Shown: in pieces, positions 1-21,815 of the stretch
How the letters are laid out: each line of letters starts with the position of its first letter
Numbering within the stretch: position 1 is the stretch's first letter
Origin: Octopus sinensis
Taxonomy: Eukaryota
Reading direction: 5' to 3'
DNA length: 24,155 nucleotides
NCBI RefSeq assembly: GCF_006345805.1
Contig: NW_021836651.1
Coordinates: 1 to 24,155 of the forward strand
The notes under the pieces: model-generated
The model's input: only the letters and a program-made list of their open reading frames with translations
Database searches by the model: none
Told to the model about the DNA's origin: nothing
Program-made: the position numbers and the translations under genes

Positions 1-360
1 AAATAACAAAACACATATATATCTATGCATAATTCTAAAACAAATGCTAAAGTTCTATATAAAAAAAACAAAAGAAAAAAAACAAAACAAAAACAGCATA
101 AAATTCAAGTCAAATAAAACAGAAACATAATAGGAAGAAGACACAGCATGTAGTGCCATATGTTGTTGTTGTTGTTGGTTGTTTGGTGGTGGTGGTGGTG
201 GTGGTCGTGGTGAGAGAAGTACTATTCTAATTAGTGTTTTTCTTTATTAAATATGTTGGGTGTTCAGGTTTCATTCTCTCTTCGCAATCATCTTTTATCC
301 TGAAAAACCTCCATGCAAAGAATTTAAAATTCTTTCTTTGTCTTCAGTTTAATTATATAT

Positions 361-540
361 GTGTGTACAGGCATTCATGTGTGCGTGTGTGTGTGGTGTG
401 TGTGTGTTCATGTGTGTATGCATGTGCATGTGTGTTGTGTGTGTGTGTGTGTGGTGTGTGTGTGTTCCTGTGTGTGTGCGTGTGTATGTAGTGTGTGTGT
501 GTTCATGTGTGTGTGTGTTTGTGTGTGCTTGTATGCACAT
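361..540. repeat. (GT)n-rich degenerate microsatellite
   Basis: Visible GT/GTGTAT iterations; source of the C/V-rich and H/T-rich pseudo-ORFs. Confidence 0.9.
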
Positions 541-575
541 ATGTACATATGTACACACAAACTTACATGGAACCA

Positions 576-945
576 CATCATCATCATCATCATCATCATC
601 ATTGTCGTTTAACATCTGCTTTCCATGCTGGCATGGGTTGGATGGTTTGACTAAGTGCTGGCGAGCCAGAATGCCGCACCAGGCTCCAATCTGATCTGGC
701 AAAGTTTCTACAGCTGGATGCCCTTCATTATGCCAACCACTCCAAGAGTGTAGTGTGTGCTTTTTATATGCCACCAGCATGAGGGCCAGTCAGGCAGTAC
801 TGGCATTGACCACACTGGAACGGTGCTTTTTATATGACACCAGCAGGGGAGCCAGTCAAGTGGCATTGGCAATGACCATGCTCGAATGGTGCTTTTTACA
901 TGCCACTGGAACAGAAGCCAGTCAGGCGGCACTGGCAATGATCAC
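576..945 (-). mobile_element. (GAT)n-tailed SINE/LINE-tail repeat (family C) with three ~63-bp internal subrepeats
   Basis: catcatcat..gtttaacatctgctttccatgctggcatgggttgga..cagctggatgccctt recurs at 5556, 6960, 16688 and 20293; the subrepeat tgctttttaYRtgccacc occurs three times. Confidence 0.8.
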
Positions 946-974
946 ATACATATCTACACACACACATACACATG

Positions 975-1745
975 TAATAATAATAATAATAATGAAATTA
1001 TTGTATACAGTGCTCAGGTGCACCACAACTTGTCAGAGTATATGCAGTAATGTACAAATGTCTGGAAAGCGAACAATGTATGAGTCAGATACATGCTTGT
1101 GTGTGTATGGAGGGGAGAAAATCAGGTGTTAGTATGGCGAATCTCAGAAAGCATGGAAGTTTTGAAGGATGCAGTGCTCCAACAACTAACAGCTGATGCC
1201 GGCAGTTTGTTCCATGCTTCAGCAACTCTCAGCGTGTGAAAAAATGCTTCCTAAAGTCATGGGAGCTGCGGCTGTTTTCTGACTTTGTAATATGTCCATG
1301 GATGTTAGACGGGTGGAGTTTGAAAAGGTGCTCAGAGTTATTGTTTGTAAGATGGTTGATAATTTTATGGGTGTCTGCCAAGTCAGCTGCCAGACGTCGG
1401 AGTTTCAATGTGTCCATGTCCAGCTTCAGCAACTTTCAGCGTGAAAAAATGTTTCCTGAAGTCATGGGAGCTGTGCTGTTTTCTGACTTTGTAAATATGT
1501 CCACGGGTGTTAGACGGGTGGAGTTTGAAAAGGTGCTCAGAGTTATTGTTTGTAAGATGGTTGATAATTTTATGGGTGTCTGCCAAGTCAGCTGCCAGAC
1601 GTCAGAGTTTCAATGTGTCCATGCCCAGGGAAGAAAGGCGTTCAGAATATGGCAAATGCCTGATGGAGGGCATTCTTTTAGTTGCACGTCGCTGAACGGC
1701 TTCCAGATGATTGTGGCCTGGGCAATGTACAGTAAGCATCATACT
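975..1745 (-). mobile_element. 5'-truncated CR1-type LINE 3' end (decayed ORF2 C-terminus, 3' UTR, (ATT)n tail)
   Basis: Minus-strand translation gives LEAVQRRATKRMPSIRHLPYSERLSSLGMDTLKL*RLAADL..TRGH..RKHFFTL(R/K)VAEAWNKLP..SFK, the typical CR1 ORF2 C-terminal motif series; it has stops and frameshifts, and a short tandem-repeat tail at ~975-992. Confidence 0.85.
1216..1623. repeat. ~205-bp tandem duplication inside the CR1 fragment
   Basis: 1216-1418 is near-identical to 1423-1623; TCCATG occurs at 1211, 1413 and 1618. Confidence 0.9.
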
Positions 1746-1785: not shown

Positions 1786-2226
1786 ACGCAGGAGTGGCTG
1801 TGTCGTAAGTAGCTTGTTTACCAACCACATAGTTCCGGGTTCAGTCCCACTGCGTGGCACCTTGGGCAAGTGTCTTCTACTATAGCCTCAGGCCGACCAA
1901 AACCTTGAGAGTGGATCTGGTAGATGGAAACTGAAAGAAGCCCGTCGTATATATGTGTTATATAATATAATATATATAATATATATATATATGTGTGTGT
2001 GTGTGTTGTGTATAGTTTGTGTGTCTTGTGTTTGTCCCCCTAGCATTGCTTGACAACCGATGCTGGTGTGTTTATGTCCCCGTTACTTAGCGGTTCGGCA
2101 AAGAGACCGATAGAATAAGTACTGGGCTTACAAAAGAATAAGTCCGGGATCAAGTTGTTCGATTAAAGGCGGTGCTCCAGCATGGCCGCAGTCAAACGAC
2201 TGAAACAAGTAAAAGAGTAAAGAGTA
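1786..2226 (+). mobile_element. tRNA-derived SINE, family A (internal (TA/TG)n, AAAGAGT-type tail)
   Basis: A-box-like TGGCTGTGTCG and B-box-like GGTTCAGTCCC; same sequence at 3996, 11379, 18333 and 21413. Confidence 0.9.
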
Positions 2227-2252
2227 TATGTGTATATATATATATATATATA

Positions 2253-2699: not shown

Positions 2700-2738
2700 A
2701 TTTACATATATGTATATGTGTGTATATATATGTATGTG

Positions 2739-2784
<46 letters not shown>

Positions 2785-2922
2785 ATAAATATACGTATAT
2801 ATATATATATATGTATATATATATGTATATATATATATATATATTATTTATAATATTATATAATATAATATTATATATACATATATATATAATAAAAATA
2901 ATAATATATTTATATATATGTA

Positions 2923-2954
<32 letters not shown>

Positions 2955-2983
2955 AATGTAATAATGATAAATAATAATAATAA
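2700..2983. repeat. (TA)n/(TAA)n microsatellite tract
   Basis: Directly visible. Confidence 0.95.
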
Positions 2984-3496
2984 ATAATATAAGGGATATT
3001 AGCCAACCGAATATGGTTAGGGACAGGGCAGGGTGGTAGGGGTGTCACTGTTGCATTTAGCCCCAGGCGAACATCAACGTCACCAGATAGGCCTGACGCC
3101 ATCACGGCGTCCTCTATCTTGCAAAGGGAGATCACTCACCAAGAAGCGGATACCACACACGGACCTAGGTTTCAAGGTGTATTGCCTATTATCAACGTGT
3201 GGTAGGCATCGCCTCTCGATGAACGACCAACTGTGCAAGATATATATAAGGATTTTCAAGTAAATACATTTACTGATTTCGAAAATCTGTTCGACAGCAA
3301 TAATAATTCTCTAAATGAGATATAGACAGTGACTGCTCCATAATATAAGGGATATTAGCCAACCGAATATGGCTAGGGACAGGGCAGGGTGGTGGGGGTG
3401 TCACTGTTGCATTTAGCCCCAGGTGAACATCAACGTCACCAGATAGGCCTGACGCCATCGCGGCGTCTCCTCTAATGCAAAGGGAGATCACTCACC
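2984..3496 (-). mobile_element. Retrozyme-like element 1: 356-nt unit plus 157-nt terminal redundancy
   Basis: 2984-3140 repeats at 3340-3496 (period 356); contains a hammerhead motif on the minus strand; homologous to 5789-6216. Confidence 0.8.
3156..3201 (-). ncRNA. Type I hammerhead ribozyme, U3-A8 variant core
   Basis: Minus strand reads CACACG UUGAUAA U AGG CAAUACA CCU U GAAAC CUAG GUC^ CGUGUG: 6-bp stem I, 3-bp stem II, short stem III with palindromic loop; predicted cleavage between 3162 and 3161. Confidence 0.75.
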
Positions 3497-3645
3497 ATTT
3501 TAAAATTTTAACTTTAAATTTAAATAATTTTAAATTTTGAATTTTATATTATATATTTTTGTATATTATATTAATTAATTTTATTTCTATGTATTGGTTT
3601 ATGTTTTTCACTGTTTGATTTGCCTAATAGTGGTTTTATCTCTAA

Positions 3646-3687
<42 letters not shown>

Positions 3688-3995
3688 CATAATATGACAT
3701 TGACAAAAGAACTTGAAATTATGCAGGGAAACATGAATATACATATATATATAGGCACACAAGTGTATGGAAATGTACTTAATGGATGAAGTCAAGGCCA
3801 GATTAAGCCATATATTAGCCCTAAGCACTTAAAAACTGTTGGTGCCCCCACACATATATATATGTAATTAAAAATATAAACCATAATATACCATAATAAA
3901 CCATAAAATAAATATTTATCTTTAAAAATGAATCAAATCTAATAAAAAAGATGGAAAATAATGTTTCTTTTTGTATATTTCTACTTTATTTATAT

Positions 3996-4392
3996 TACTC
4001 TTTACTCTTTTACTTGTTTCAGTCATTTGACTGCAGCCACGCTGGAGCACCGCCTTTAGTCAAGCAAATCAACCCCCGGGACTTATTCTTTTGTAAGCCC
4101 AGTACTTATTCTATCGGTCTCTTTTGCCGAACCGCTAAGTTACGGGGACGTATACACACCAGCATCGGTTGTCAAGCGATGCTAGGGGGACAAACACAGA
4201 CACACAAACACGCACACACACATATATACAACGGGCTTCTTTCAGTTTCCGTCCACCAAATCCACTCACAAGGCTTTGGTCGGCCCGAGGCTATAGTAGA
4301 AGACACCTGCCCAAGGTACCACGCAGTGGGACTGAACCCGGAACCATGTGGTTCGTAAGCAAGCTACTTACCACACAGCCACTCCTGCGCCT
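3996..4392 (-). mobile_element. tRNA-derived SINE, family A, full length
   Basis: Reverse complement of the 11379-11790 copy. Confidence 0.92.
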
Positions 4393-5089
4393 TGTTTTTT
4401 AACTCATCTAAATATTTCATGATATATAGATAGATATAATATATTTTGTCATATATGTGGTTTATAAAGTCTAAGATTCTAGGTTTTAAATGCTTATCAT
4501 TTAAAATTTGAAATATTCAAAGTATGATGATTAGTAAGGCATCTAAATATAAGGATCAAAATCAAATTAAAATAAGTGATACGTAATGAAATCTATCAGT
4601 TGAAAAGGGAATGATTAAAGCTAGATAAGTAGAAAAAGTAAGAAGTTGGGAGATTCAAAATACAATTGTTGAAGAAAGAGGAAAGAAAAGAATCTAGAAA
4701 TACAAAAATGTGAGGGGACGATATATATATAAAAGGAGTTTGAATGGTGAGAAGGAAGAGAAAAAAACGAAAGAGAAATTGTATATATGAATTATTGTAT
4801 AGTAGAGGGTTCAATTATTTTAGCCATCTTAAGTTATTATTGCGTAATAGAGAAAACATAAATATTGAAGAGAAGAGTAAGTGAAAGATTAATGTATATA
4901 AATGTAATTATAGAAGTAAATTGAAGAAAAAGAAGAAAAAAAAAGAAAGAAAATTAAATTTTGGGGAGAGATAAATTCATTATTGTTTGCGAGGAATTGA
5001 GAAATAGATTCATGGATTTGTATCCAAATTGTTGTAGAAGAAAGGAAGGGGAAGAAGGATTCCCTTGAAGAGAAAGAGAAAAAAGCATA

Positions 5090-5133
5090 GTTCATATATA
5101 TATATATACATAGTGTGTGTATATATATATATA

Positions 5134-5166
<33 letters not shown>

Positions 5167-5242
5167 GTGTATATATATATATATATGTATATATGTGTGT
5201 GTATATATATAATATATATATAATATATATATGTGTGTATAT

Positions 5243-5273
<31 letters not shown>

Positions 5274-5281
5274 GTGTGTAT

Positions 5282-5317
<36 letters not shown>

Positions 5318-5523
5318 GTGTATATATATATATGATATGTGTATATATATGTGTATATATATATGATATGTGTATATATATATATATATATGATATGTGT
5401 ATATATATTTGTATATATATATGATATGTGTATATATATGTGTATATATATGATATGTGTATATATATATGATATATATATATGTATATATATGTGTATA
5501 TATATATATATATATCATATATA

Positions 5524-5556
<33 letters not shown>
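5090..5556. repeat. (TA)n/(TATG)n compound microsatellite
   Basis: Directly visible; explains the I/Y-rich ORFs. Confidence 0.95.
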
Positions 5557-5727
5557 CATCATCATCATTGTTTAATATCTGCCTTCCATGCTGGGATGGG
5601 TGACATGGTTTGACAAGAGCTGGCCAGACTTCTGTAACTGTTTTGGCAAATTTTTACAGCTGGATGCCCTTCCTAACACCAACAACTCAGCAGAGTGGAC
5701 TTAGTGGCTTTTATGTGGCACAAGCAT
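5556..5727 (-). mobile_element. Family C repeat fragment
   Basis: catcatcat..ttccatgctgggatggg..cagctggatgcccttcctaacaccaac matches 576-945. Confidence 0.75.
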
Positions 5728-5745
5728 AGCAAGTTCAATATATAT

Positions 5746-5787
<42 letters not shown>

Positions 5788-5788
5788 C

Positions 5789-6216
5789 AATATTAAATCT
5801 CTGAACGAGATGTAAACAGTAACTGCTCGACAACGTAAAGTATAATAGCCATCTCAATATGGCTAACCACTAAGGGTGGGTGTTACTGTAGCTTTTAGCC
5901 CCAGGAGATCATCGTCTCCAGCTGGCTTTAGGCACACTTTCTGTGCCCTTATGGTATTTGCAAAGGGAGGTCATCCCTCTCTCGTAAACCTAAGTGACAC
6001 GCACGGACTGCAGTTTCTAGGTATTTGCCTGTCTTCGGCGTACGGCAGTCACCGGTTTACGATGAAAGGGAGACCTGTCTGCTAATACTTATTGTTTTTT
6101 TAGTAACTTCCGTCACTGATTTCGTAAAACTGTCTGCAGGGAATAATAAATCTCTGAATGAGATGTAAACAGTAACTGCTCGACAACGTAAAGTATACTA
6201 GCCATCTCAATATGGC
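5789..6216 (-). mobile_element. Retrozyme-like element 2: 353-nt unit plus 75-nt terminal redundancy
   Basis: 5789-5863 repeats at 6142-6216 (period 353); conserved blocks are collinear with element 1 but the endpoints differ; minus-strand hammerhead. Confidence 0.8.
6001..6043 (-). ncRNA. Type I hammerhead ribozyme, CCGAAGA variant core
   Basis: Minus strand reads GUACG CCGAAGA C AGG CAAAUA CCU A GAAAC UGCA GUC^ CGUGC; predicted cleavage between 6006 and 6005. Confidence 0.75.
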
Positions 6217-6309
6217 CAAGGTGCTGTACAGTGAGACTGAACCCAATACTACAAGGCTGGGAAGCAAGCTCCTGTGTAAAGCATAATGCATACCCACTCA
6301 ACTAGTCTC

Positions 6310-7112: not shown

Positions 7113-7350
7113 GAGGTGGCGATCTGGCAGAAATGTTAGTGCACCGGGCGAAATGCTTAGCGGTATTTTGTCTGTTGTTATGTTCTGAGTTCAAGTTCTG
7201 CCGAGGTCGACTTTGCCCTTCATCCTTTCGGGGTCGATAAATAAAGTACCAGTTGTTTCGCACTGGGGATCGATGTAATCGACTTAATCCCTTTGCCTGT
7301 CCTTGGTTGTCCCTTCTATGTTTTAGTCCCTTGTGGGCAGTAAAGAAATA
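7113..7350 (+). mobile_element. tRNA-derived SINE, family B (Deu/Nin-like central domain)
   Basis: B-box GAGTTCAAG; central gccgaggtcgactttgcccttcatcctttcggggtcgataaa..gtaccag resembles, from memory, the conserved Deu/Nin SINE domain; further copies at 17011 and 21045. Confidence 0.85.
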
Positions 7351-7659
7351 TATATATATATTTGAAAGGCTTTGTGAAAATTACTTGATGCAGTTTTTAT
7401 GTATAATGGGGATTTTTTTTAAAAGATTATTTTTTAAAAAAATTTATAAAATCTTTTATCAGATTGTTACCAACCTTTTTGGAAGAAGTTTTTTTTCTAG
7501 TGTTTGTGAGAGTGCATTTGATTAATCTTTTCAAACACACCTGCTATTGGATATACATATATGTGACTGCCCAGTATTACAAAAAATATTTATACTCTAC
7601 TTTTGTGTTGATATACATGCATACATCCAGTGTATGCATTATGTATGTTTGTGTGTATA

Positions 7660-7721
<62 letters not shown>

Positions 7722-7823
7722 GGAGTAAACACATAAATGTGAAACAAGGTGGAAAAAAGAGTACTCAAATACCAGTGGTAGAGTAATATGCTTTATTCAA
7801 AATCAGCAGAAAATTCAACAAAA

Positions 7824-7862
7824 CCTGTTACTCAGAGTTTCCCGTTGCCGTTCGTCGGACAG
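7824..7862 (-). ncRNA. Minimal hammerhead (CCGACGA core), minus arm
   Basis: CUGU CCGACGA ACG GCAA CGG GAAA CUC U GAG UA^ ACAG; 4-bp stem I; one stem II mismatch. Confidence 0.55.
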
Positions 7863-7897
7863 TCTGACGAACGGGAACGTGAAACTCAGAGTAGCAG
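7860..7897 (+). ncRNA. Minimal hammerhead (canonical CUGACGA core), plus arm
   Basis: CUGACGA at 7864-7870, ACG-GGAA-CGU stem II, GAAA at 7881-7884, ACUC-A-GAGU stem III, GUA^ at 7891-7893; stem I is imperfect. Confidence 0.6.
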
Positions 7898-7930
7898 GTT
7901 TTGTTGAATTTCCTGCTGCTTTTGAATAAA

Positions 7931-7986
<56 letters not shown>

Positions 7987-8762
7987 ATGCCCACACACAC
8001 ATATATATACATGTACACATACGCAGATTTAATGAATAGTTGTATCCATACACATACACATTTCTACGCATTTGTGTTGTAGTTGTGTTACTTTGCAACA
8101 CCATGTTGTAGCCATAAGCAAGTTCCACATAATGTTTTATATCAGTCATCCTGATGGAAAGTAAGTGCCATACACTCTTCACAGATGAACAGTTAACTGC
8201 TGGAAAGGTGTCAGTCAGCTGGAAAATCAGTTTCCTCACCTCCTAGCAATTCATCAGACAAATGTCCTAATTTCCTAAAAGAAAACAAAAAAAGCAGAGC
8301 ATGGAAATATAAACAATGACAATGATTTTTATGAAAGACACTCATCCTACATCGACATGTATACATACATACTGTACACACACATACACCACACACACAC
8401 ATACATAAACACATGCACTTGTACATGCGTGTGTGGTTGATACTTGTGAAATGAATGTGTGAGTGTGTGTTTGTGTCTGTCTATTGTATGTGTACTGTAA
8501 TGTGTTGGAATGCATGTATGCACATCTATGTTTATATATGTATATATCTATATGTGTGTGTGTTTGTATACATATATATATACATATATAAACAGAGTAT
8601 ATTTCTGTGTTTTATACTGGCATGCATGTGTATCCCTTTTCTCTCTGCTACTGTGTGCACACACACACACACACACACATACACAAACGCATGCACACAC
8701 ACACACACAGAAAGCCAAAGGAAAAAAACAAGGCAAATGTGTTTGTCTGTGTGTGTGTGTGT

Positions 8763-8798
<36 letters not shown>

Positions 8799-8801
8799 AT
8801 A

Positions 8802-9016
8802 CCGGAGTAAACACATAAATGTGAACAAGGTGGAAAAAAAGTACTCAAATACCAGTGGTAGAGTAATATGCTTTATTCAAAATCAGCAGAAAATTCAACA
8901 AAACCTGTTACTCAGAGTTTCCCGTTGCCGTTCGTCGGACAGTCTGACGAACGGGAACGTGAAACTCAGAGTAGCAGGTTTTGTTGAATTTCCTGCTGCT
9001 TTTGAATAAAGTATAT
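8802..9016 (-). mobile_element. Second copy of the pLTR-like hammerhead hairpin
   Basis: Duplicate of 7720-7936; CUGACGA at 8944-8950. Confidence 0.7.
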
Positions 9017-9824
9017 ATATATATATATATTATATATATATATATATATACACACATACATGCCCACACACACATATATATTACATGTACACATACGCAG
9101 ATTTAATGAATAGTTGTATCCATACACATACACATTTCTACGCATTTGTGTTGTAGTTGTGTTACTTGACTTTGCACACCATGTTGTAGCCATAAGCAAG
9201 TTCCACATAATGTTTTATATCAGTCATCCTGATGGAAAGTAAGTGCCATACACTCTTCACAGATGAACAGTTACTGCTGGAAAGGTGTCAGTCAGCTGGA
9301 AAATCAGTTTCCTCCTCCTCCCTAGCAATTCATCAGACAAATGTCCTAATTTCCTAAAGAAAACAAAAAAGCAGAGCATGGAAATATAACAATGACAATG
9401 ATTTTTATGAAAGACACTCATCCTACATCGACATGTATACATACATACTGTACACACACATACACACACACACACATACATAAACACATGCACTTGTACA
9501 TGCGTGTGTGGTTGATACTTGTGAAATGAATGTGTGAGTGTGTGTTTGTGTCTGTCTATTGTATGTGTACTGTAATGTGTTGGAATGCATGTATGCACAT
9601 CTATGTTTATATATGTATATATCTATATGTGTGTGTGTTTGTATACATATATATATATACATATATAAACAGAGTATATTTCTGTGTTTTATACTGGCAT
9701 GCATGTGTATCCCTTTTCTCTCTGCTACTGTGTGCACACACACACACACACACACATACACAAACGCATGCACACACACACACACAGAAAGCCAAAGGAA
9801 AAAAACAAGGCAAATGTGTTTGTC

Positions 9825-9856
<32 letters not shown>

Positions 9857-10659: not shown

Positions 10660-10804
10660 AGGTGCAACTGGTAATTAGTTTATCACCCCTAAAAGAAATT
10701 TAAACAAAGTTAACCTCAGCAGCATTTGAACTCAGAGCATAAAGATGGACGAAGTGCTGCTAAGCATTTGGCCTGGCATGCTAATGATTCTGCCATCGTG
10801 CTGC
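10660..10804 (-). mobile_element. Diverged family B SINE fragment
   Basis: Reverse complement reads tggcagaatcattagcatgccaggccaaatgcttagc..tgagttcaaatgctgctgaggttaactttg. Confidence 0.7.
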
Positions 10805-11276
10805 AATGTTACCTGGTGTCTATTAACTATAAAAAAAAATCAAGCGTATGTTTACACGTTTGGTGTGAACTTTTTTGTTGCTTTGACAAATGATAGTTCA
10901 GCAAAGCACAACTGCACGGTTCTCTTGGTTGCCATGGCTGCCCTGTATGTAGGGTCAAAGCTGAAGACTTCCTGTAGCATCGTCTCTCTCTCTGTCTTCA
11001 TCACCTCTTCACTATCACCTCTGGACTTACGAAGAGAGCATGATGGTGTTGGTCTCTTGGTTCTCTAAATACCCTGCATGATGAATATTGAATGGTTTGT
11101 GTGGCCAGTCTGATCCTCTCATCCTTCAAACTTGTATCGGTCGGGTGCAACGAGTATCATGAGCCAAGTAATTATCAACATGCAGCATCTCTATGGCAGT
11201 GCCTTCTCTTACACCAAACATGTAAACATACGCTTGAGTTTTTTTTTTTATAGTTAATAGACACCAGGTCACATTG
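10804..11276. mobile_element. Unclassified TIR element (MITE-like), ~63-66-bp terminal inverted repeats
   Basis: 10804-10866 (caatgttacctggtgtctattaactata..tttggtgt) is the reverse complement of 11211-11276 with ~3 differences; no clear target-site duplication. Confidence 0.75.
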
Positions 11277-11378: not shown

Positions 11379-11790
11379 AGGCGCAGGAGTGGCTGTGTGG
11401 TAAGTAGCTTGCTAACCAACCACATGGTTCCGGGTTCAGTCCCACTGCGTGGCATCTTGGGCAAGTGTCTTCTACTATAGCCCCGGGCCGACCAATGCCT
11501 TGTGAGTGGATTTGGTAGACGTAAACTGAAAGAAGCCTGTCGTATATATGTATATATATGTATATGTCTGTGTATATGTTTGGGTGTCTGTGTTTGTCCC
11601 TCTAGCATTGCTTGACAACCGATGCTGGTGTGTTTACGTCTCCGTCACTTAGCGGTTCGGCAAAAGAGACCGATAGAATAAGTACTGGGCTTACAAAGAA
11701 TAAGTCCCGGGGTCGATTTGCTCGACTAAAGGCGGTGCTCCAGCATGGCTGCAGTCAAATGACTGAAACAAGTAAAAGAGTAAAAGAGTA
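11379..11790 (+). mobile_element. tRNA-derived SINE, family A, full length
   Basis: aggcgcaggagtggctgtgtgg..gaaacaagtaaaagagtaaaagagta. Confidence 0.92.
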
Positions 11791-14529: not shown

Positions 14530-15760
14530 ATGCTACATTGTTATCATGATGACGACGATGATGATAATATTCTCATCCTTTTCATCATCATCATCATCAT
14601 CATAGCATTATTATCATTCCTCTCTGCCTCCTTCTTGCCGTCATCGGCGTCATCTTCGTCATCATTGCTGTCATCATCACCTTCATCATCTTCATCTTTA
14701 TCATCATTGTCATCCTCATGATGATGATGATCATCACCATTAACATGATCATTGTCATTATCAGCTTCGTCATCAGTGTCATCATCATGGTCCTCCCGTC
14801 CTCCTCATCATCGTCATCATCCTCTTCATCATCATTGCCCTTCTCATTGTCATCATCATCATCCTCATCATCATCATCTTCATCATCATCATCACTGTCA
14901 TCATCATTGTCTTCAACATCATCACCGTCATCATCACTTCATCTTTGTCCTCACCGTCATCATCATCCTCCTCATCATCATCATTTTCTTCATCATCATC
15001 ACTGTCATCATCATCAGCATCATCATTGTCTTCAACATCACCACCGTCATCATCACTTCATCTTTGTCCTTCTCATCGTCATCATCATCCTCATCATCAT
15101 CATCTTCCTCATCATCATCACTTCATCTTTGTCCTTCTCATCGTCATCATCCTCATCATCATCTTCCTCATCATCATCATCAGCATCATCATTGTCTTCA
15201 ACATCACCACCATCATCATCACTTCATCTTTGTCCTTCTCATCGTCATCATCCTCATCATCATCTTCCTCATCATCATCATCAGCATCATCATTGTCTTC
15301 AACATCACCACCGTCATCATCACTTCATCTTTGTCCTTCTCATCGTCATCATCATCCTCATCATCATCATCTTCCTCATCATCATCACTTCATCTTTGTC
15401 CTTCTCATCGTCATCATCCTCATCATCATCTTCCTCATCATCATCATCAGCATCATCATTGTCTTCAACATCACCACCGTCATCATCACTTCATCTTTGT
15501 CCTTCTCATCGTCATCATCATCCTCATCATCATCATCTTCCTCATCATCATCACTTCATCTTTGTCCTTCTCATCGTCATCATCCTCATCATCATCTTCC
15601 TCATCATCATCATCAGCATCATCATTGTCTTCAACATCACCACCGTCATCATCACTTCATCTTTGTCCTTCTCATCGTCATCCTCTTCAGCATTATCATT
15701 GCCGTCGTCATCATCATCATCATCATCCCCATCTTCAACTTCTTCATTAGGTTGATCTTC
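14530..15760. repeat. (CAT)n-derived minisatellite with higher-order units
   Basis: Marker cagcatcatcattgtcttcaac recurs at ~15016, 15181, 15279, 15448 and 15614. Confidence 0.9.
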
Positions 15761-17002: not shown

Positions 17003-17245
17003 ATAAAAGATAAGGCGGCGAGCTGGCAGAATTGTTAGCACGCCGGGCAAAATGCGTAGCCGTATTTTGTCTGCCATTATGTTTTGAGTTCAAATTCCGC
17101 CGAGGTCGACTTTGCTTTTCATCCTTTCGGGGTCGATAAATTAAGTACCAGTTACGCACTGGGGTCGATGTAATCGACTTAATACCTGTGTCTGTCCTTG
17201 TTTGTCCCCTCTCTGTTTGGCCCCTTGTGGGTAGTAAAGAAATAC
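17003..17245 (+). mobile_element. Family B SINE with a 12-bp target-site duplication
   Basis: ATATAGGTGCAG at 16991-17002 and 17246-17257. Confidence 0.88.
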
Positions 17246-17247
17246 AT

Positions 17248-17420
17248 ATAGGTGCAGGTGTGGCTGTGTGGTTAAGGTGCTTGTTTCTCAGCCATGTGGT
17301 CTTGGATTCAGTCTCACTGTGCAGCACCTTGGACAAGTGACTTCCATTATAGCCCCAGACCAACCAAAGCCTTGTGGTTGGATTTCAGAGAGAGAAACTG
17401 AAAGAAGCCTGTTGTGTGTC
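17248..17420 (+). mobile_element. Family A-like SINE head (degraded)
   Basis: ataggtgcaggtgtggctgtgtgg..gaaactgaaagaagcc. Confidence 0.7.
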
Positions 17421-17840: not shown

Positions 17841-18332
17841 CTCTGGAAACTATTTTAAGGGTGCACATGTCTGTGGAGTACTCAGCCATTTGCATTTTAA
17901 TTTCACAAACAGGTTGTTCTTTTGATCAGATCAGCCGGACCCCTCATCATCATAATCGATGCAGGGCCAATTCTTGTGTGTGTCCAACATATAGTCAAGG
18001 CTGTTCAAACCCAATTTACTTTGGAAGAAATATGTCTGGCTATGCAAAAATATTACCATGCTTGGCAAAAATGAAAGGCATCTCATTGCAGAAAGTCTCC
18101 CATGATAAATTCTGTCTCACTCATGGAAGCGTGGAAAAATGGATGTTTGATGATGATACAAAGACACATACACACTGATCTTTATGTGTGTGTGTGTGTG
18201 TATATGTAATATATATATATGAGGGGTTGATGAAAAATTCCTGGTTATTAAGAACAACTTTACATTAAACCGTAGGATTACTCAATACATTTCTCTTGAG
18301 AGCAAATCTACATTGTAGATGTATATAATACA

Positions 18333-18495
18333 TGTGGCTGTGTGGTAAGTAGCTTGCTTACGAACCACATGGTTCCGGGTTCAGGCCCACTGCGTGGCAC
18401 CTTGGGTAAGTGTCTTCTACTATAGCCTTGGGCCGATCAAAGCCTTGTGAGTGGATTTGGTAGACAGAAACTGAAAGAAGCCCGTCGTATATATG

Positions 18496-18526
<31 letters not shown>

Positions 18527-18740
18527 ATGTGCGTGTTTGTGTGTCTGTCTTTGTCCCCCCAACGTCGCTTGACAACCGATGCTGGTGTGTATACGTCCCC
18601 GTAACTTAGCGGTTCGGCAAAAAGAGTCCGATAAAATAAGTACTAGGCTTACAAAGAATAAGTCCTGGGGTCGATTTGCTCGATTAAAGGCGGTGCTCCA
18701 GCATGGCGGCAGTCAAATGACTGAAACAAGTAAAAGAGTA
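18333..18740 (+). mobile_element. tRNA-derived SINE, family A
   Basis: Aligns with 11379-11790. Confidence 0.9.
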
Positions 18741-19851: not shown

Positions 19852-20269
19852 GAGCAGTGGTGGTGTGGCGCGCAGACCTATACAGGGTGGAAGCGCTCAG
19901 TCAGCCAGCTTCAAAATCCCTTCTTCTATTGCCTCCTCCCCTCTGATCCCACCTCTTCCTACCAACAGCGAGTGTCCTCCACCATCCTCGACCTCATCTC
20001 CTCTTCTGCTCTCCACCCCACCGCCACCAACCTCATCGTCTGTACACCCCGAACCTCCCCAAAATGTGACCACGTGTGTACCGTTGGCGATTTTTTTTCC
20101 TCTGTCTTCCCTTCTCTGGATCTTTCCTTCTCTGTTTCCGACGAAGAGCTCCGCCCGAAACGTTAAACCCTCCTTCTTTCCTTCTTTTCTGAGCGTCCAA
20201 TAATACTATATTTGTTCCACGTCCTCGCGTTGTTGTGTTTTTTTTGTGCTTTCTTGTTTGGATTAACTT
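19852..20269 (+). mobile_element. Internally deleted Penelope-like element (pre-RT ORF fragment fused to 3' terminal repeat)
   Basis: Translation AVVVWRADLYRVEALSQ(4-bp duplication)LQNPFFYCLLPSDPTSSYQQRVSSTILDLI..LIVCTPRT matches the PLE DKG-VVV..DPT..PRT region; followed by a minimal hammerhead; (TA)n on both sides. Confidence 0.75.
20134..20168 (+). ncRNA. Minimal hammerhead (CCGACGA core, loopless palindromic stem III)
   Basis: GUUU CCGACGA A GAGC UCC GCCC GAAAC GUU^ AAAC; 4-bp stem I; predicted cleavage after 20164. Confidence 0.65.
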
Positions 20270-20292
20270 TATATATATATATATACATATAT

Positions 20293-20581
20293 ATCATCGT
20301 TTAGCGTCTGCTTTCCATGCTGGCATGGGTTGGACGGTGCAACTGGGGTCTGGGAAGCCAGAAGGCTGCACCAGGCTCCAGTCTGATCTGGCAGTGTTTC
20401 TACAGCTGGATGCCCTTCCTAACACCAACCACTCCGTGAGTGTAGTGGGTGCTTTTTACGTGCCACCTGCACAGGTGCCAGACAAGTCTGGCAATGGCCA
20501 CGGTCAGATGGTGCTTTTTATGTGCCACCGGCACGGAGGCCAAGCGAGGCTGGCAAACGGCCACAATCGGATGGTGCTTTT
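20293..20581 (-). mobile_element. Family C repeat
   Basis: Matches 576-945, including the subrepeats. Confidence 0.8.
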
Positions 20582-20642
20582 ATATATATATATATATACA
20601 TATATATATAAACATATATATATATATATATGTGTATGTATA

Positions 20643-20871
20643 TATGAGTGGGTACTGAAAAGAGAGTTGCTGGCTTTGAATAAAAGAAAATAGAGGAGGT
20701 TCAATTAATTATGATTTTATTTAACATGGTCCCTTCTCAGATACTCACACACCTATTGCAGCAGTCCTTCAGTTTTTCTAAACCCTGTAAAAGAACTCGG
20801 AAGGTTGGGCCTCCAACCAGGCCTTTCATGACACCCTTAAAGCCAGGAACTTTTCAGCACCATCTTGCATA
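20643..20871. mobile_element. Tc1/mariner-type MITE
   Basis: tatgag..ctgaaaag..ctggcttt and aaagccaggaacttttcagcac..cata are inverted ends at TA sites. Confidence 0.75.
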
Positions 20872-21044: not shown

Positions 21045-21279
21045 ATAAGGCGGCGAGCTGGCAGAGACGTTAGCACGCCGGGCGAAATGCGTAGCCGTAT
21101 TTCATCTGCCATTATGTTTTGAGTTCAAATTCCGTCGAGGTTGACTTTGCCTTTCATCCTTTCAGGGTCGATAAATTAAGTACCAGTTACGCACTGGGGT
21201 CGATGTAATCGACTTAATCCGTTTGTCTGTCCTTGTTTGTCCCATATGTGTTTAGCCCCTTGTGGGTAGTAAAGAAATA
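21045..21279 (+). mobile_element. Family B SINE nested in an antisense family B-like SINE (20980-21400)
   Basis: Target-site duplication GATTACATCAACCC (21031-21044) / GATTACATCAAGCCC (21280-21294). Confidence 0.88.
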
Positions 21280-21412
21280 GATTACATCAAGCCCAGTGTT
21301 TCACTGGTACTTAATTTATTGATCCCGAAAGGATGAAAGCAATGTTGACCTCAGTGGAATTGAACTCAGAGCATTGCAGCAAATGAAATATCCTTAAGGA
21401 TTTTTCCCTGTC

Positions 21413-21803
21413 TACTTTACTCTTTTACTTGTTTCAGTCATTTGACTGCGGCCATGCTGGAGCACCATCTTTAGTCGAGCAAATCTTTTGTAAGCCCAGT
21501 ACTTATTCTATCGGACTCTTTGCCGAACCGCTAAGTAACGGGGACGTAAACACACCAGCATCGGTTGTCAAGCAATGCTAGGGGGACAAACACAGACACA
21601 CAAACACACACATGCATATATATATATATATATATATATATCATATATACGACGGGCTTCTTTCAGTTTCCGTCTACCAAATCCACTGACAAGGCTTTGG
21701 TCGGCCCGAGGCTATAGTAGAAGACACTTGCCCAAGGTGCCATGCAGTGGGACTGAACCCGGAACCATGTGGTTGGTAAGCAAGCTACTTACCACACAGC
21801 CAC
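21413..21803 (-). mobile_element. tRNA-derived SINE, family A
   Basis: Reverse complement of family A. Confidence 0.9.
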
Positions 21804-21815
21804 TTGTGTGCCTTC

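What the first reader, a model, noticed from the sequence alone, without database searches (positions are those of the whole stretch)
2984..6216. Two diverged, circularly permuted ~355-nt hammerhead elements: a candidate cephalopod retrozyme (circular RNA replicon) family
Seen in sequence: 2984-3496 is a 356-nt unit plus 157 nt of redundancy, and 5789-6216 is a 353-nt unit plus 75 nt. They share collinear blocks (TAGCCA..AATATGGCTA, GGTGTYACTGT, TTTAGCCCCAGG, TGCAAAGGGAGRTCA, CACGGAC, ACTGATTTCG) but start and end at different points of the unit. Each has one minus-strand type I hammerhead at the homologous position and encodes no protein. Established: metazoan non-LTR retrozymes are ~150-400-nt tandem units with type I hammerheads that yield circular RNAs. 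Inference: more-than-unit-length, permuted insertions are what reverse transcription around a circular template produces. I do not recall this family being described in octopus.
Basis: partly seen in the sequence, partly recalled or inferred. Interest (0 to 1): 0.92.

Follow-up and report, generated by a model that had tools for sequence, protein, structure and literature searches.

The report
Two old hammerhead retroelement (retrozyme-like) copies
Two decayed, non-coding ~355-nt mobile-element copies sit 2.3 kb apart, each longer than one unit and each carrying one variant hammerhead self-cleaving RNA motif; they look like an undescribed family of the known animal "retrozyme" class, not a new kind of element.

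Summary
The repeat anatomy is real. A (2984-3496) is 1.44 copies of a 356-nt unit. B (5785-6216) is 1.22 copies of a 353-nt unit. The internal overlaps are 94% identical, and A and B are about 67% identical (E 1e-20). Their ends fall at different unit positions.

Both carry, at homologous minus-strand positions, a type I hammerhead-shaped motif: 6-bp helix I, 4-position helix II, GAAA, an 8-nt palindromic helix III and GUC. A relaxed descriptor finds only these two sites in the window and none in 200 shuffles. All 18 modelled pairs hold in both copies, four by compensatory change, including C3-G8 in B versus U3-A8 in A.

The cores are not consensus. B has C4, and both mismatch 10.1-11.1. Rfam gives nothing at gathering score. 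Each locus has only one ribozyme, so neither can release a unit-length RNA.

Best reading: two independent old insertions of diverged subfamilies of a non-autonomous, Penelope-dependent hammerhead retroelement (non-LTR retrozyme class). Both landed at AT microsatellites and were copied from a template that spans the cleavage junction. A circular RNA template is plausible but not distinguished from an uncleaved multimer.

No other copy could be retrieved, and neither the taxon nor family-level novelty could be tested. Verdict: new member of a known kind, moderate interest.

The parts
2984..3496 (-). Element A: 1.44 copies of a 356-nt unit. In RNA-sense unit coordinates it is 22..356 then 1..178.
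   Evidence: Direct repeat with 356-nt spacing, 94% identity. Boundaries.
2984..3141 (-). A, redundant segment copy 1. It pairs with 3340-3497 and plays the pseudo-LTR role.
   Evidence: The differences are 4 transitions plus one small rearranged patch at 3110-3119 / 3466-3475.
3340..3497 (-). A, redundant segment copy 2.
3143..3213 (-). A hammerhead-like domain. Sequence: helix Ib, UAC bulge, helix Ia CACACG, core UUGAUAA, helix II UAGG/CCUU with loop CAAUACA, GAAAC-CUAG-GUC, predicted cleavage between 3162 and 3161, then CGUGUG.
5785..5863 (-). B, redundant segment copy 1. It pairs with 6138-6216.
   Evidence: four substitutions (5788, 5793, 5806, 5845), about 95% identity.
6138..6216 (-). 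B, redundant segment copy 2.
5785..6216 (-). Element B: 1.22 copies of a 353-nt unit. In RNA-sense unit coordinates it is 143..353 then 1..217 (221 counted to the 5785 edge). The right edge is ambiguous up to 6219.
   Evidence: Direct repeat with 353-nt spacing, about 95% identity. 67.5% identity to A.
5987..6056 (-). B hammerhead-like domain. Sequence: helix Ib, UGC bulge, helix Ia CGUACG, core CCGAAGA, helix II CAGG/CCUA with loop CAAAUA, GAAAC-UGCA-GUC, predicted cleavage between 6006 and 6005, then CGUGCG.
   Evidence: No Rfam match.
2706..2983 (.). (AT)n / (AATAAT)n microsatellite abutting the RNA-sense 3' end of A. Probable insertion target.
5738..5784 (.). (AT)24 microsatellite abutting the RNA-sense 3' end of B. 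Probable insertion target.
6217..6300 (-). Diverged tRNA-like SINE head joined to the RNA-sense 5' end of B, on the same strand, with a GGC(C/T)AA overlap at the junction.
   Evidence: (family D13) and the alignment to the window's five SINE copies.

Best explanation
A and B are two independent, old, dead-on-arrival insertions. They come from two diverged subfamilies of one short (about 355 nt), non-coding, hammerhead-bearing retroelement. The class is that of metazoan non-LTR retrozymes, that is, non-autonomous passengers of Penelope-like elements.

Inferred life cycle:
1. Master loci with two or more tandem units are transcribed on the strand that is minus here.
2. The type I hammerheads have helix III reduced to two pairs plus a palindromic tetraloop. 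They therefore pair between neighbouring units as a double hammerhead and cut after GUC.
3. [quoted passage not shown]
4. A Penelope-type endonuclease and reverse transcriptase nicks a (TA)n-type microsatellite.
5. cDNA synthesis is primed on an AU-rich patch of the RNA. That would explain why both 3' ends sit on AU-rich unit positions next to AT repeats.
6. The enzyme copies past the cleavage/ligation junction for more than one unit before the cDNA is joined to the chromosome.

Shown here: the repeat anatomy, the motif and its covariation, that the template spanned the junction, and the microsatellite flanks. Inferred: cleavage activity, circularisation, and the identity of the reverse transcriptase.

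With one ribozyme each, the two copies in this window can at most cut a read-through transcript once.
For: 1. Units of 356 and 353 nt, 1.44 and 1.22 copies, 94% internal identity.
2. A and B are homologous but only 60-67% identical. Their internal repeats are 94% identical, so these are separate insertions, not two LTRs of one event.
3. The hammerhead topology occurs only at these two sites and in 0 of 200 shuffles.
4. All 18 modelled pairs are standard in both copies, against 17-47% when partners are slid. Four pairs change on both sides, including C3-G8 to U3-A8.
5. U3-A8 is a documented natural active covariant. U4C is a documented natural variant that still supports viroid infectivity (PMC3088659).
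6. A U.U mismatch at the base of helix II occurs in the axolotl HHR_Amex2 of a 353-nt retrozyme (PMC7229834).
7. ACCUAGGU (A) and ACUGCAGU (B) differ in sequence but are both 8-nt palindromes. Dimer cofolding returns the double hammerhead with an 8-bp intermolecular helix III. This is the published dimer-dependent architecture (PMC4209133, PMC7229834).
8. The sense-strand circular folds are unusually stable, z = -4.4 and -6.2, with a long extended helix I. GC is 44.7%.
9. Both predicted cleavage sites are internal to the insertions. The template was therefore not a cleaved linear monomer.
10. Both RNA-sense 3' ends abut AT microsatellites. That matches the (TA)n bias and partial-tandem habit of Penelope-like elements and their non-autonomous derivatives (PMC8557442).
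11. No ORF has homologues.
Against: - No Rfam hammerhead model reaches its gathering score. A scores 14.9 bits against 52, and B scores nothing.
- Core deviations (C4 in B, U3/A8 in A) and a non-paired 10.1-11.1 in both predict weak or no cleavage.
- There are only two sequences, so the covariation is anecdotal. 41 of 500 shuffles reach the observed score, and the structure and descriptor were drawn from these same sequences.
- Neither locus has the tandem arrangement of two or more ribozymes that defines a retrozyme.
- No other family member, no Penelope-like element and no RNA data could be obtained.
- No target-site duplication is discernible.
Confidence: 0.7

Rival explanations
1. Same element class, but the template was an uncleaved multimeric or read-through linear transcript, inserted in the usual Penelope manner. 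That manner gives a 5'-truncated upstream copy forming a pseudo-LTR, plus an occasional 30-40-bp tail. No circular RNA is involved.
For: Penelope-like elements and their non-autonomous derivatives form partial tandems, head-to-tail multicopy insertions and 30-40-bp tails without any need for circles (PMC8557442). B's 3' end lies about 41 nt beyond A's in unit coordinates, which is tail-sized. The variant cores and dimer-dependent helix III predict inefficient cleavage, so uncleaved multimers would be plentiful.
Against: Published metazoan retrozymes of this size accumulate mainly as circles (PMC7229834). With n = 2 the data cannot separate a fixed 3' end plus tail from free start points on a circle.
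Confidence: 0.35
2. An ordinary dispersed repeat or short satellite whose hammerhead resemblance is a fossil or coincidence. On this reading no self-cleavage occurs in any family member.
For: All Rfam thresholds fail. There are non-consensus core positions and a mismatched 10.1-11.1. Each locus has a single motif. The descriptor and structure tests were designed after seeing the motif.
Against: 0 of 200 shuffles contain such a motif, while two homologous sites do. Helix I, the 3-8 pair and the helix III palindrome are kept through compensatory changes in copies that are otherwise 60-67% identical. Both core variants have natural active precedents (PMC3088659).
Confidence: 0.15
3. A and B are the two pseudo-LTRs of one decayed Penelope-like element, or the remnants of one old tandem array, lying between about 2984 and 6216.
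For: They have the same orientation. The ribozyme-to-ribozyme distance is 2844 nt, close to the approximately 3 kb reported for Penelope pseudo-LTR pairs (PMC4209133).
Against: A and B are 67% identical, while each one's own internal repeat is 94% identical. The intervening 3497-5784 holds a SINE, microsatellites and low-complexity DNA. It has no unit-like sequence and no RT or endonuclease ORF.
Confidence: 0.04

Closest known systems
Metazoan non-LTR retrozymes (Cervera & de la Pena 2020, PMC7229834), for example the Mytilus galloprovincialis 350-390-bp units and the axolotl Rtz353
   Same: - Non-coding unit of about 355 nt and GC below 50%.
- Type I hammerhead with a 6-bp helix I, a 4-position helix II and a short palindromic helix III.
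- U.U at the base of helix II, as in HHR_Amex2.
- A highly self-paired predicted circle.
- More-than-unit genomic copies.
   Different: - Only 1.2 to 1.4 units and one ribozyme per locus, not dimers to multimers.
- Core variants U3-A8 and C4.
- No expression or circularity data.
Penelope-like elements and their non-autonomous derivatives with pseudo-LTRs (PMC8557442, PMC4209133; bioRxiv 10.64898/2026.07.22.740005)
   Same: - Partial-tandem (pseudo-LTR-like) insertion architecture.
- Insertion next to (TA)n-type microsatellites.
- No clear target-site duplication.
- A hammerhead on the transcribed strand.
   Different: - No RT or GIY-YIG ORF.
- The ribozyme is of the canonical metazoan shape (helix I 6 bp, helix II 4 positions, helix III present). 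It is not the minimal Penelope variant, which has a 6-8-bp helix II, a bulge after A9 and no helix III.
- In A the duplicated segment does not contain the ribozyme.
Newt/salamander satellite 2 and the schistosome Sm-alpha SINE-like hammerhead repeats. The Sm-alpha comparison is from my own knowledge and was not checked here.
   Same: - About 330-nt units.
- Type I hammerhead that is dimer-dependent through a weak helix III.
- Loop 2 of B (CAAAUA) resembles what I recall of the schistosome motif.
- B is joined to a tRNA-like head, reminiscent of Pol III-type SINE-like hammerhead elements.
   Different: - No sequence comparison could be run.
- The tRNA-like head is present at B only and may be an unrelated neighbour.

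Membership tests
Hammerhead ribozyme, type I | Three-way junction with helix I open and helices II and III closed by loops. | tested here: met
   Helix I is 6+6 bp, helix II has 3 pairs plus one mismatch with a 6-7-nt loop, and helix III has 2 bp plus a tetraloop, in both copies.
Hammerhead ribozyme, type I | Conserved core: C3 U4 G5 A6 N7 G8 A9 ... G12 A13 A14 ... A15.1-U16.1, H17. | tested here: inconclusive
   G5, A6, A9, GAAA, A15.1-U16.1 and GUC are present in both. A has U3/A8, a documented active covariant. B has C4, a documented attenuated natural variant (PMC3088659). The strict consensus is not met.
Hammerhead ribozyme, type I | G10.1-C11.1 pair at the base of helix II. | tested here: not met
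   U.U in A and C.A in B. U.U has a precedent in axolotl HHR_Amex2 (PMC7229834).
Hammerhead ribozyme, type I | Score at or above the gathering threshold of an Rfam hammerhead model (clan CL00010). | tested here: not met
   No hit at gathering score. A reaches 14.9 bits on HH9 against a cut-off of 52, E 0.23 in a 111-nt search. B has no hit at E <= 10.
Hammerhead ribozyme, type I | Site-specific self-cleavage. | not testable with these tools
   Needs in vitro transcription of monomer and dimer constructs.
Metazoan non-LTR retrozyme | Short (about 150-450 nt) non-coding unit with a type I hammerhead, low GC, and no LTR, PBS or PPT. | tested here: met
   Units of 356 and 353 nt, GC 44.7%. No ORF has homologues.
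Metazoan non-LTR retrozyme | Head-to-tail tandem copies giving two or more ribozymes per locus, so that a unit can be excised. | tested here: not met
   The loci hold 1.44 and 1.22 units with one ribozyme each. They correspond to the 'monomer derivatives' of bioRxiv 10.64898/2026.07.22.740005.
Metazoan non-LTR retrozyme | Highly self-paired unit RNA. | tested here: met
   Circular MFE of -109.7 and -115.9 kcal/mol, z = -4.4 and -6.2 against shuffles. The antisense strand is weaker.
Metazoan non-LTR retrozyme | Expressed as linear and circular unit-length RNA. | not testable with these tools
   No transcriptome access.
Metazoan non-LTR retrozyme | Multi-copy dispersed family that co-occurs with Penelope-like elements in the genome. 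| not testable with these tools
   Only two copies lie in 24 kb. No cephalopod genome is reachable. The literature reports Penelope-like (Naiad) families in Octopus spp. and Penelope elements in the giant squid (PMC8557442, PMC6962438).
Penelope-like element (autonomous) with pseudo-LTR hammerheads | An RT plus GIY-YIG endonuclease ORF between the direct repeats. | tested here: not met
   No such ORF lies in or between A and B. Pfam returned nothing for the ORFs tested.
Penelope-like element (autonomous) with pseudo-LTR hammerheads | Minimal hammerhead: helix II of 6-8 bp, an extra nucleotide between A9 and 10.1, and helix III absent or purely palindromic. | tested here: not met
   Helix II has 4 positions and helix I is 6 bp with an internal bulge. 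Only the palindromic helix III is shared (PMC4209133).

The most novel reading that the evidence does not exclude
An active, so far undescribed cephalopod retrozyme family with three features. Its subfamilies use naturally co-varying catalytic cores (C3-G8 versus U3-A8). It makes abundant ~355-nt circular RNAs. It integrates by microhomology-primed reverse transcription at (TA)n microsatellites. At least one lineage may have captured a tRNA-like Pol III head, as the B junction at 6217-6300 hints.
Probability: 0.25. Interest if true: 0.55.

Novelty: new member of a known kind. Interest (0 to 1): 0.36.

Why it matters
If confirmed genome-wide, it would add cephalopods to the animals known to carry retrozyme-type circular-RNA retroelements.

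It would also give a natural pair of subfamilies in which the hammerhead C3-G8 pair has switched to U3-A8.

Finally, the insertion end-points at AT microsatellites could help decide how Penelope-type enzymes prime on retrozyme RNA, from a circle or from a multimer.

As it stands, it is a plausible annotation of two decayed repeat copies. It is useful for repeat libraries, because Rfam-based screens would miss it, but it is not a new mechanism.

Tried and rejected
Searches for other family members:
1. Exact degenerate DNA patterns from a conserved block and from the ribozyme, against JGI metagenome contigs and IMG/VR. No hits.
2. Chance ORFs of the element used as handles into the 5.8-billion protein collection and the 1.84-billion representative library. 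No hits.
3. An ORF of the window's very abundant SINE used as a handle to reach related genome contigs. No hits. The collections evidently do not hold non-genic ORFs of this organism.
4. Look-up of a long window ORF to identify the source contig. Not on record.
5. Literature string searches for the ribozyme, a conserved block and the two SINE families. Only irrelevant primer matches, or none.

Other checks that gave nothing:
6. A covariance model built from A and B finds no third copy in the window.
7. ARAGORN finds no tRNA in the SINE heads.
8. The bacterial promoter and terminator scan is uninformative for this sequence.

Readings rejected:
9. A and B as LTRs of one element or relics of one array: 67% identity between them against 94% within each, and no RT between them.
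10. A second ribozyme class on either strand: no Rfam hit at E <= 10.
Full report
**Observation**

The region holds two direct-repeat structures. 2984-3141 repeats at 3340-3497, with 356-nt spacing and 94% identity. 5785-5863 repeats at 6138-6216, with 353-nt spacing and about 95% identity. Locus A (2984-3496) is therefore 1.44 copies of a 356-nt unit, and locus B (5785-6216, right edge ambiguous to 6219) is 1.22 copies of a 353-nt unit. Tandem Repeats Finder does not list them.

A and B align to each other at 67.5% identity over 348 nt (E 1e-20). Nothing else in the 24-kb window resembles them.

**The ribozyme-like motif**

On the minus strand both units contain, at homologous columns, the following sequences:

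| Part | A | B |
|---|---|---|
| Helix I, 5' strand | CACACG | CGUACG |
| Core | UUGAUAA | CCGAAGA |
| Helix II and loop 2 | UAGG-CAAUACA-CCUU | CAGG-CAAAUA-CCUA |
| Junction and helix III | GAAAC-CUAG-GUC | GAAAC-UGCA-GUC |
| Cleavage site, then helix I 3' strand | CGUGUG | CGUGCG |

This is the type I hammerhead topology. It has a 6-bp helix I followed by a 3-nt bulge and a second 6-bp helix. Helix II has four positions with a 6-7-nt loop. Helix III is a 2-bp stem closed by a palindromic tetraloop.

I scanned with a deliberately relaxed descriptor. It required GAAA, A15.1-U16.1, a 15.2-16.2 pair, H17, helix I 6/6, helix II at least 3/4, and at most two core deviations. It finds exactly these two sites on both strands of the window and none in 200 dinucleotide-preserving shuffles.

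All 18 pairs of the model are standard pairs in both copies, against 17-47% when the 3' partners are slid by 1-3 columns. Four pairs differ on both sides between A and B. One of those four is the tertiary 3-8 pair, which is C-G in B and U-A in A. Perreault et al. describe exactly this covariation as natural and active (PMC3088659).

The helix III sequences ACCUAGGU and ACUGCAGU differ at four positions, yet both are perfect 8-nt palindromes. Cofolding two copies returns the double hammerhead, with an 8-bp intermolecular helix III, as the minimum-energy dimer. That is the dimer-dependent design described for newt, axolotl and Penelope-associated hammerheads (PMC4209133, PMC7229834).

**Caveats on the ribozyme**

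- Neither core is consensus. B has C4 instead of U4. That variant is known from a viroid, where it lowers activity in vitro but still allows infectivity (PMC3088659).
- Both copies have a non-pair at 10.1-11.1. It is U.U in A, as in axolotl HHR_Amex2 of a 353-nt retrozyme (PMC7229834), and C.A in B.
- Rfam finds nothing at gathering score.
- In a 111-nt search A reaches only 14.9 bits on Hammerhead_HH9, whose cut-off is 52. B gives nothing at E <= 10.
- With two sequences the covariation is suggestive, not a statistic. 41 of 500 shuffles reach the observed score.
- The structure and the descriptor were drawn from these same sequences.
- Activity is untested.

**Whole-unit properties**

Each unit has 44.7% GC, in a window that averages about 37%. 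Folded as a circle in the ribozyme sense, the units give -109.7 and -115.9 kcal/mol, z = -4.4 and -6.2. The antisense strands are less exceptional, at z = -1.2 and -3.9. The fold is dominated by a roughly 30-bp extension of helix I that is kept in both copies through several compensatory changes.

ORFs are 80 aa or shorter. They have no homologue in the word-indexed collection, none in the 1.84-billion representative library, and no Pfam match.

**Insertion anatomy**

In RNA-sense coordinates, with position 1 just after GUC, A is 22..356+1..178 and B is 143..353+1..217. Three things follow directly.

1. Both predicted cleavage sites are internal. The template was therefore not a self-cleaved linear monomer. 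It was either a circle or an uncleaved multimer.
2. Each locus holds one ribozyme only. Neither can release a unit-length RNA. They are dead-on-arrival copies of the kind Li et al. call monomer derivatives (bioRxiv 10.64898/2026.07.22.740005).
3. Both RNA-sense 3' ends lie on AU-rich unit sequence and abut AT microsatellites: (AT)n/(AATAAT)n at 2706-2983 and (AT)24 at 5738-5784.

Penelope-like elements and their non-autonomous derivatives are reported to prefer (TA)n and other microsatellites, to obscure target-site duplications there, and to insert as partial tandems (pseudo-LTRs) with 30-40-bp tails (PMC8557442). B's 3' end lies about 41 nt beyond A's in unit coordinates. That is compatible either with such a tail or with free priming around a circle.

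I therefore infer target-primed reverse transcription by a Penelope-type enzyme, primed by AT/AU microhomology. Two copies cannot discriminate a circular template from a multimeric one.

**Independent insertions**

A and B are separate events from diverged subfamilies. They are 67% identical to each other, while each one's own overlap is 94% identical. The 2.3 kb between them holds a SINE (3996-4392), microsatellites and low-complexity DNA. It contains no unit-like sequence and no RT ORF. That rules out the reading of A and B as pseudo-LTRs of one Penelope element or as relics of one array.

**An unexpected junction**

The RNA-sense 5' end of B is joined, on the same strand, to about 85 nt resembling the tRNA-like head of the window's abundant SINE. 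The resemblance is about 70% identity, running from roughly the head's 5' end to its last bases. The junction has a GGC(C/T)AA overlap. It could be any of three things:
- a template switch at the end of reverse transcription;
- insertion into an older SINE fragment;
- a Pol III-headed variant.

A has nothing comparable. This is left open.

**Comparison with known families**

The closest known class is the metazoan non-LTR retrozyme (PMC7229834, PMC7761336). The two loci match it in unit size (mussel units are 350-390 bp), GC, ribozyme architecture, predicted self-pairing and more-than-unit copies. The tandem arrangement with two or more ribozymes is not met at these loci. Expression as circles could not be tested.

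The ribozyme is not the minimal Penelope variant. Its helix II has 4 positions, not 6-8, and it has no bulge after A9.

**Limits and novelty**

No tool here reaches cephalopod genomes, Dfam or Repbase. Every attempt to fetch relatives failed. The octopus origin and the claim that the family is undescribed therefore remain unverified.

My literature searches found no octopus or cephalopod retrozyme paper. The giant squid genome paper already counts 235 Rfam Hammerhead_1 loci (PMC6962438), and Penelope-like families are reported in Octopus spp. (PMC8557442).

**Verdict**

The retrozyme reading is the best available at about 0.7. The circular-template step is plausible but unproven. The find is a new member of a known kind, of moderate interest.

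Noticed in passing
window 6217-6300 (minus strand): A diverged tRNA-like SINE head is fused directly to the RNA-sense 5' end of element B, on the same strand, with a GGC(C/T)AA overlap. It could be a template-switch chimera, a nested insertion, or a Pol III-headed hammerhead SINE like those reported in schistosomes.
   Followed up: partly
window 1787-2227, 3996-4392, 11379-11790, 18330-18740, 21415-21813: Five 400-430-nt copies of one tRNA-headed SINE, 82-90% identical pairwise, in both orientations. One lies between A and B. ARAGORN calls no tRNA in them.
   Followed up: partly
window 352-946, 5553-5737, 20235-20645: A second repeat family. It has 62-66-nt internal tandem units, a (CAT)n run at one end, and in two of its three copies a (TA)n run at the other. 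The (AT)24 next to B belongs to, or abuts, the 5553-5737 copy.
   Followed up: no
window 7652-8778 and 8738-9856: A 1.1-kb tandem duplication at 97% identity. It contains a 151-nt inverted repeat (7786-7936, 8866-9016).
   Followed up: no
window 7114-7356, 17010-17250, 21045-21282: A third dispersed repeat of about 240 nt, 84-92% identical between copies. At 17250 it is adjacent to SINE-like sequence.
   Followed up: no
window 14671-15727: A 1-kb TCA-rich minisatellite with higher-order periods of 101, 166 and 267 nt and a strong negative GC skew.
   Followed up: no
window 10730-11065 (+): A 112-aa ORF gives a weak, sub-threshold Pfam match to Transglut_C (E 0.008, 16.7 bits against a cut-off of 26.6). 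It could be chance or a decayed exon.
   Followed up: no
window 1211-1628: A 205-nt unit repeated twice at 93% identity, inside a 183-aa ORF with no Pfam match.
   Followed up: no
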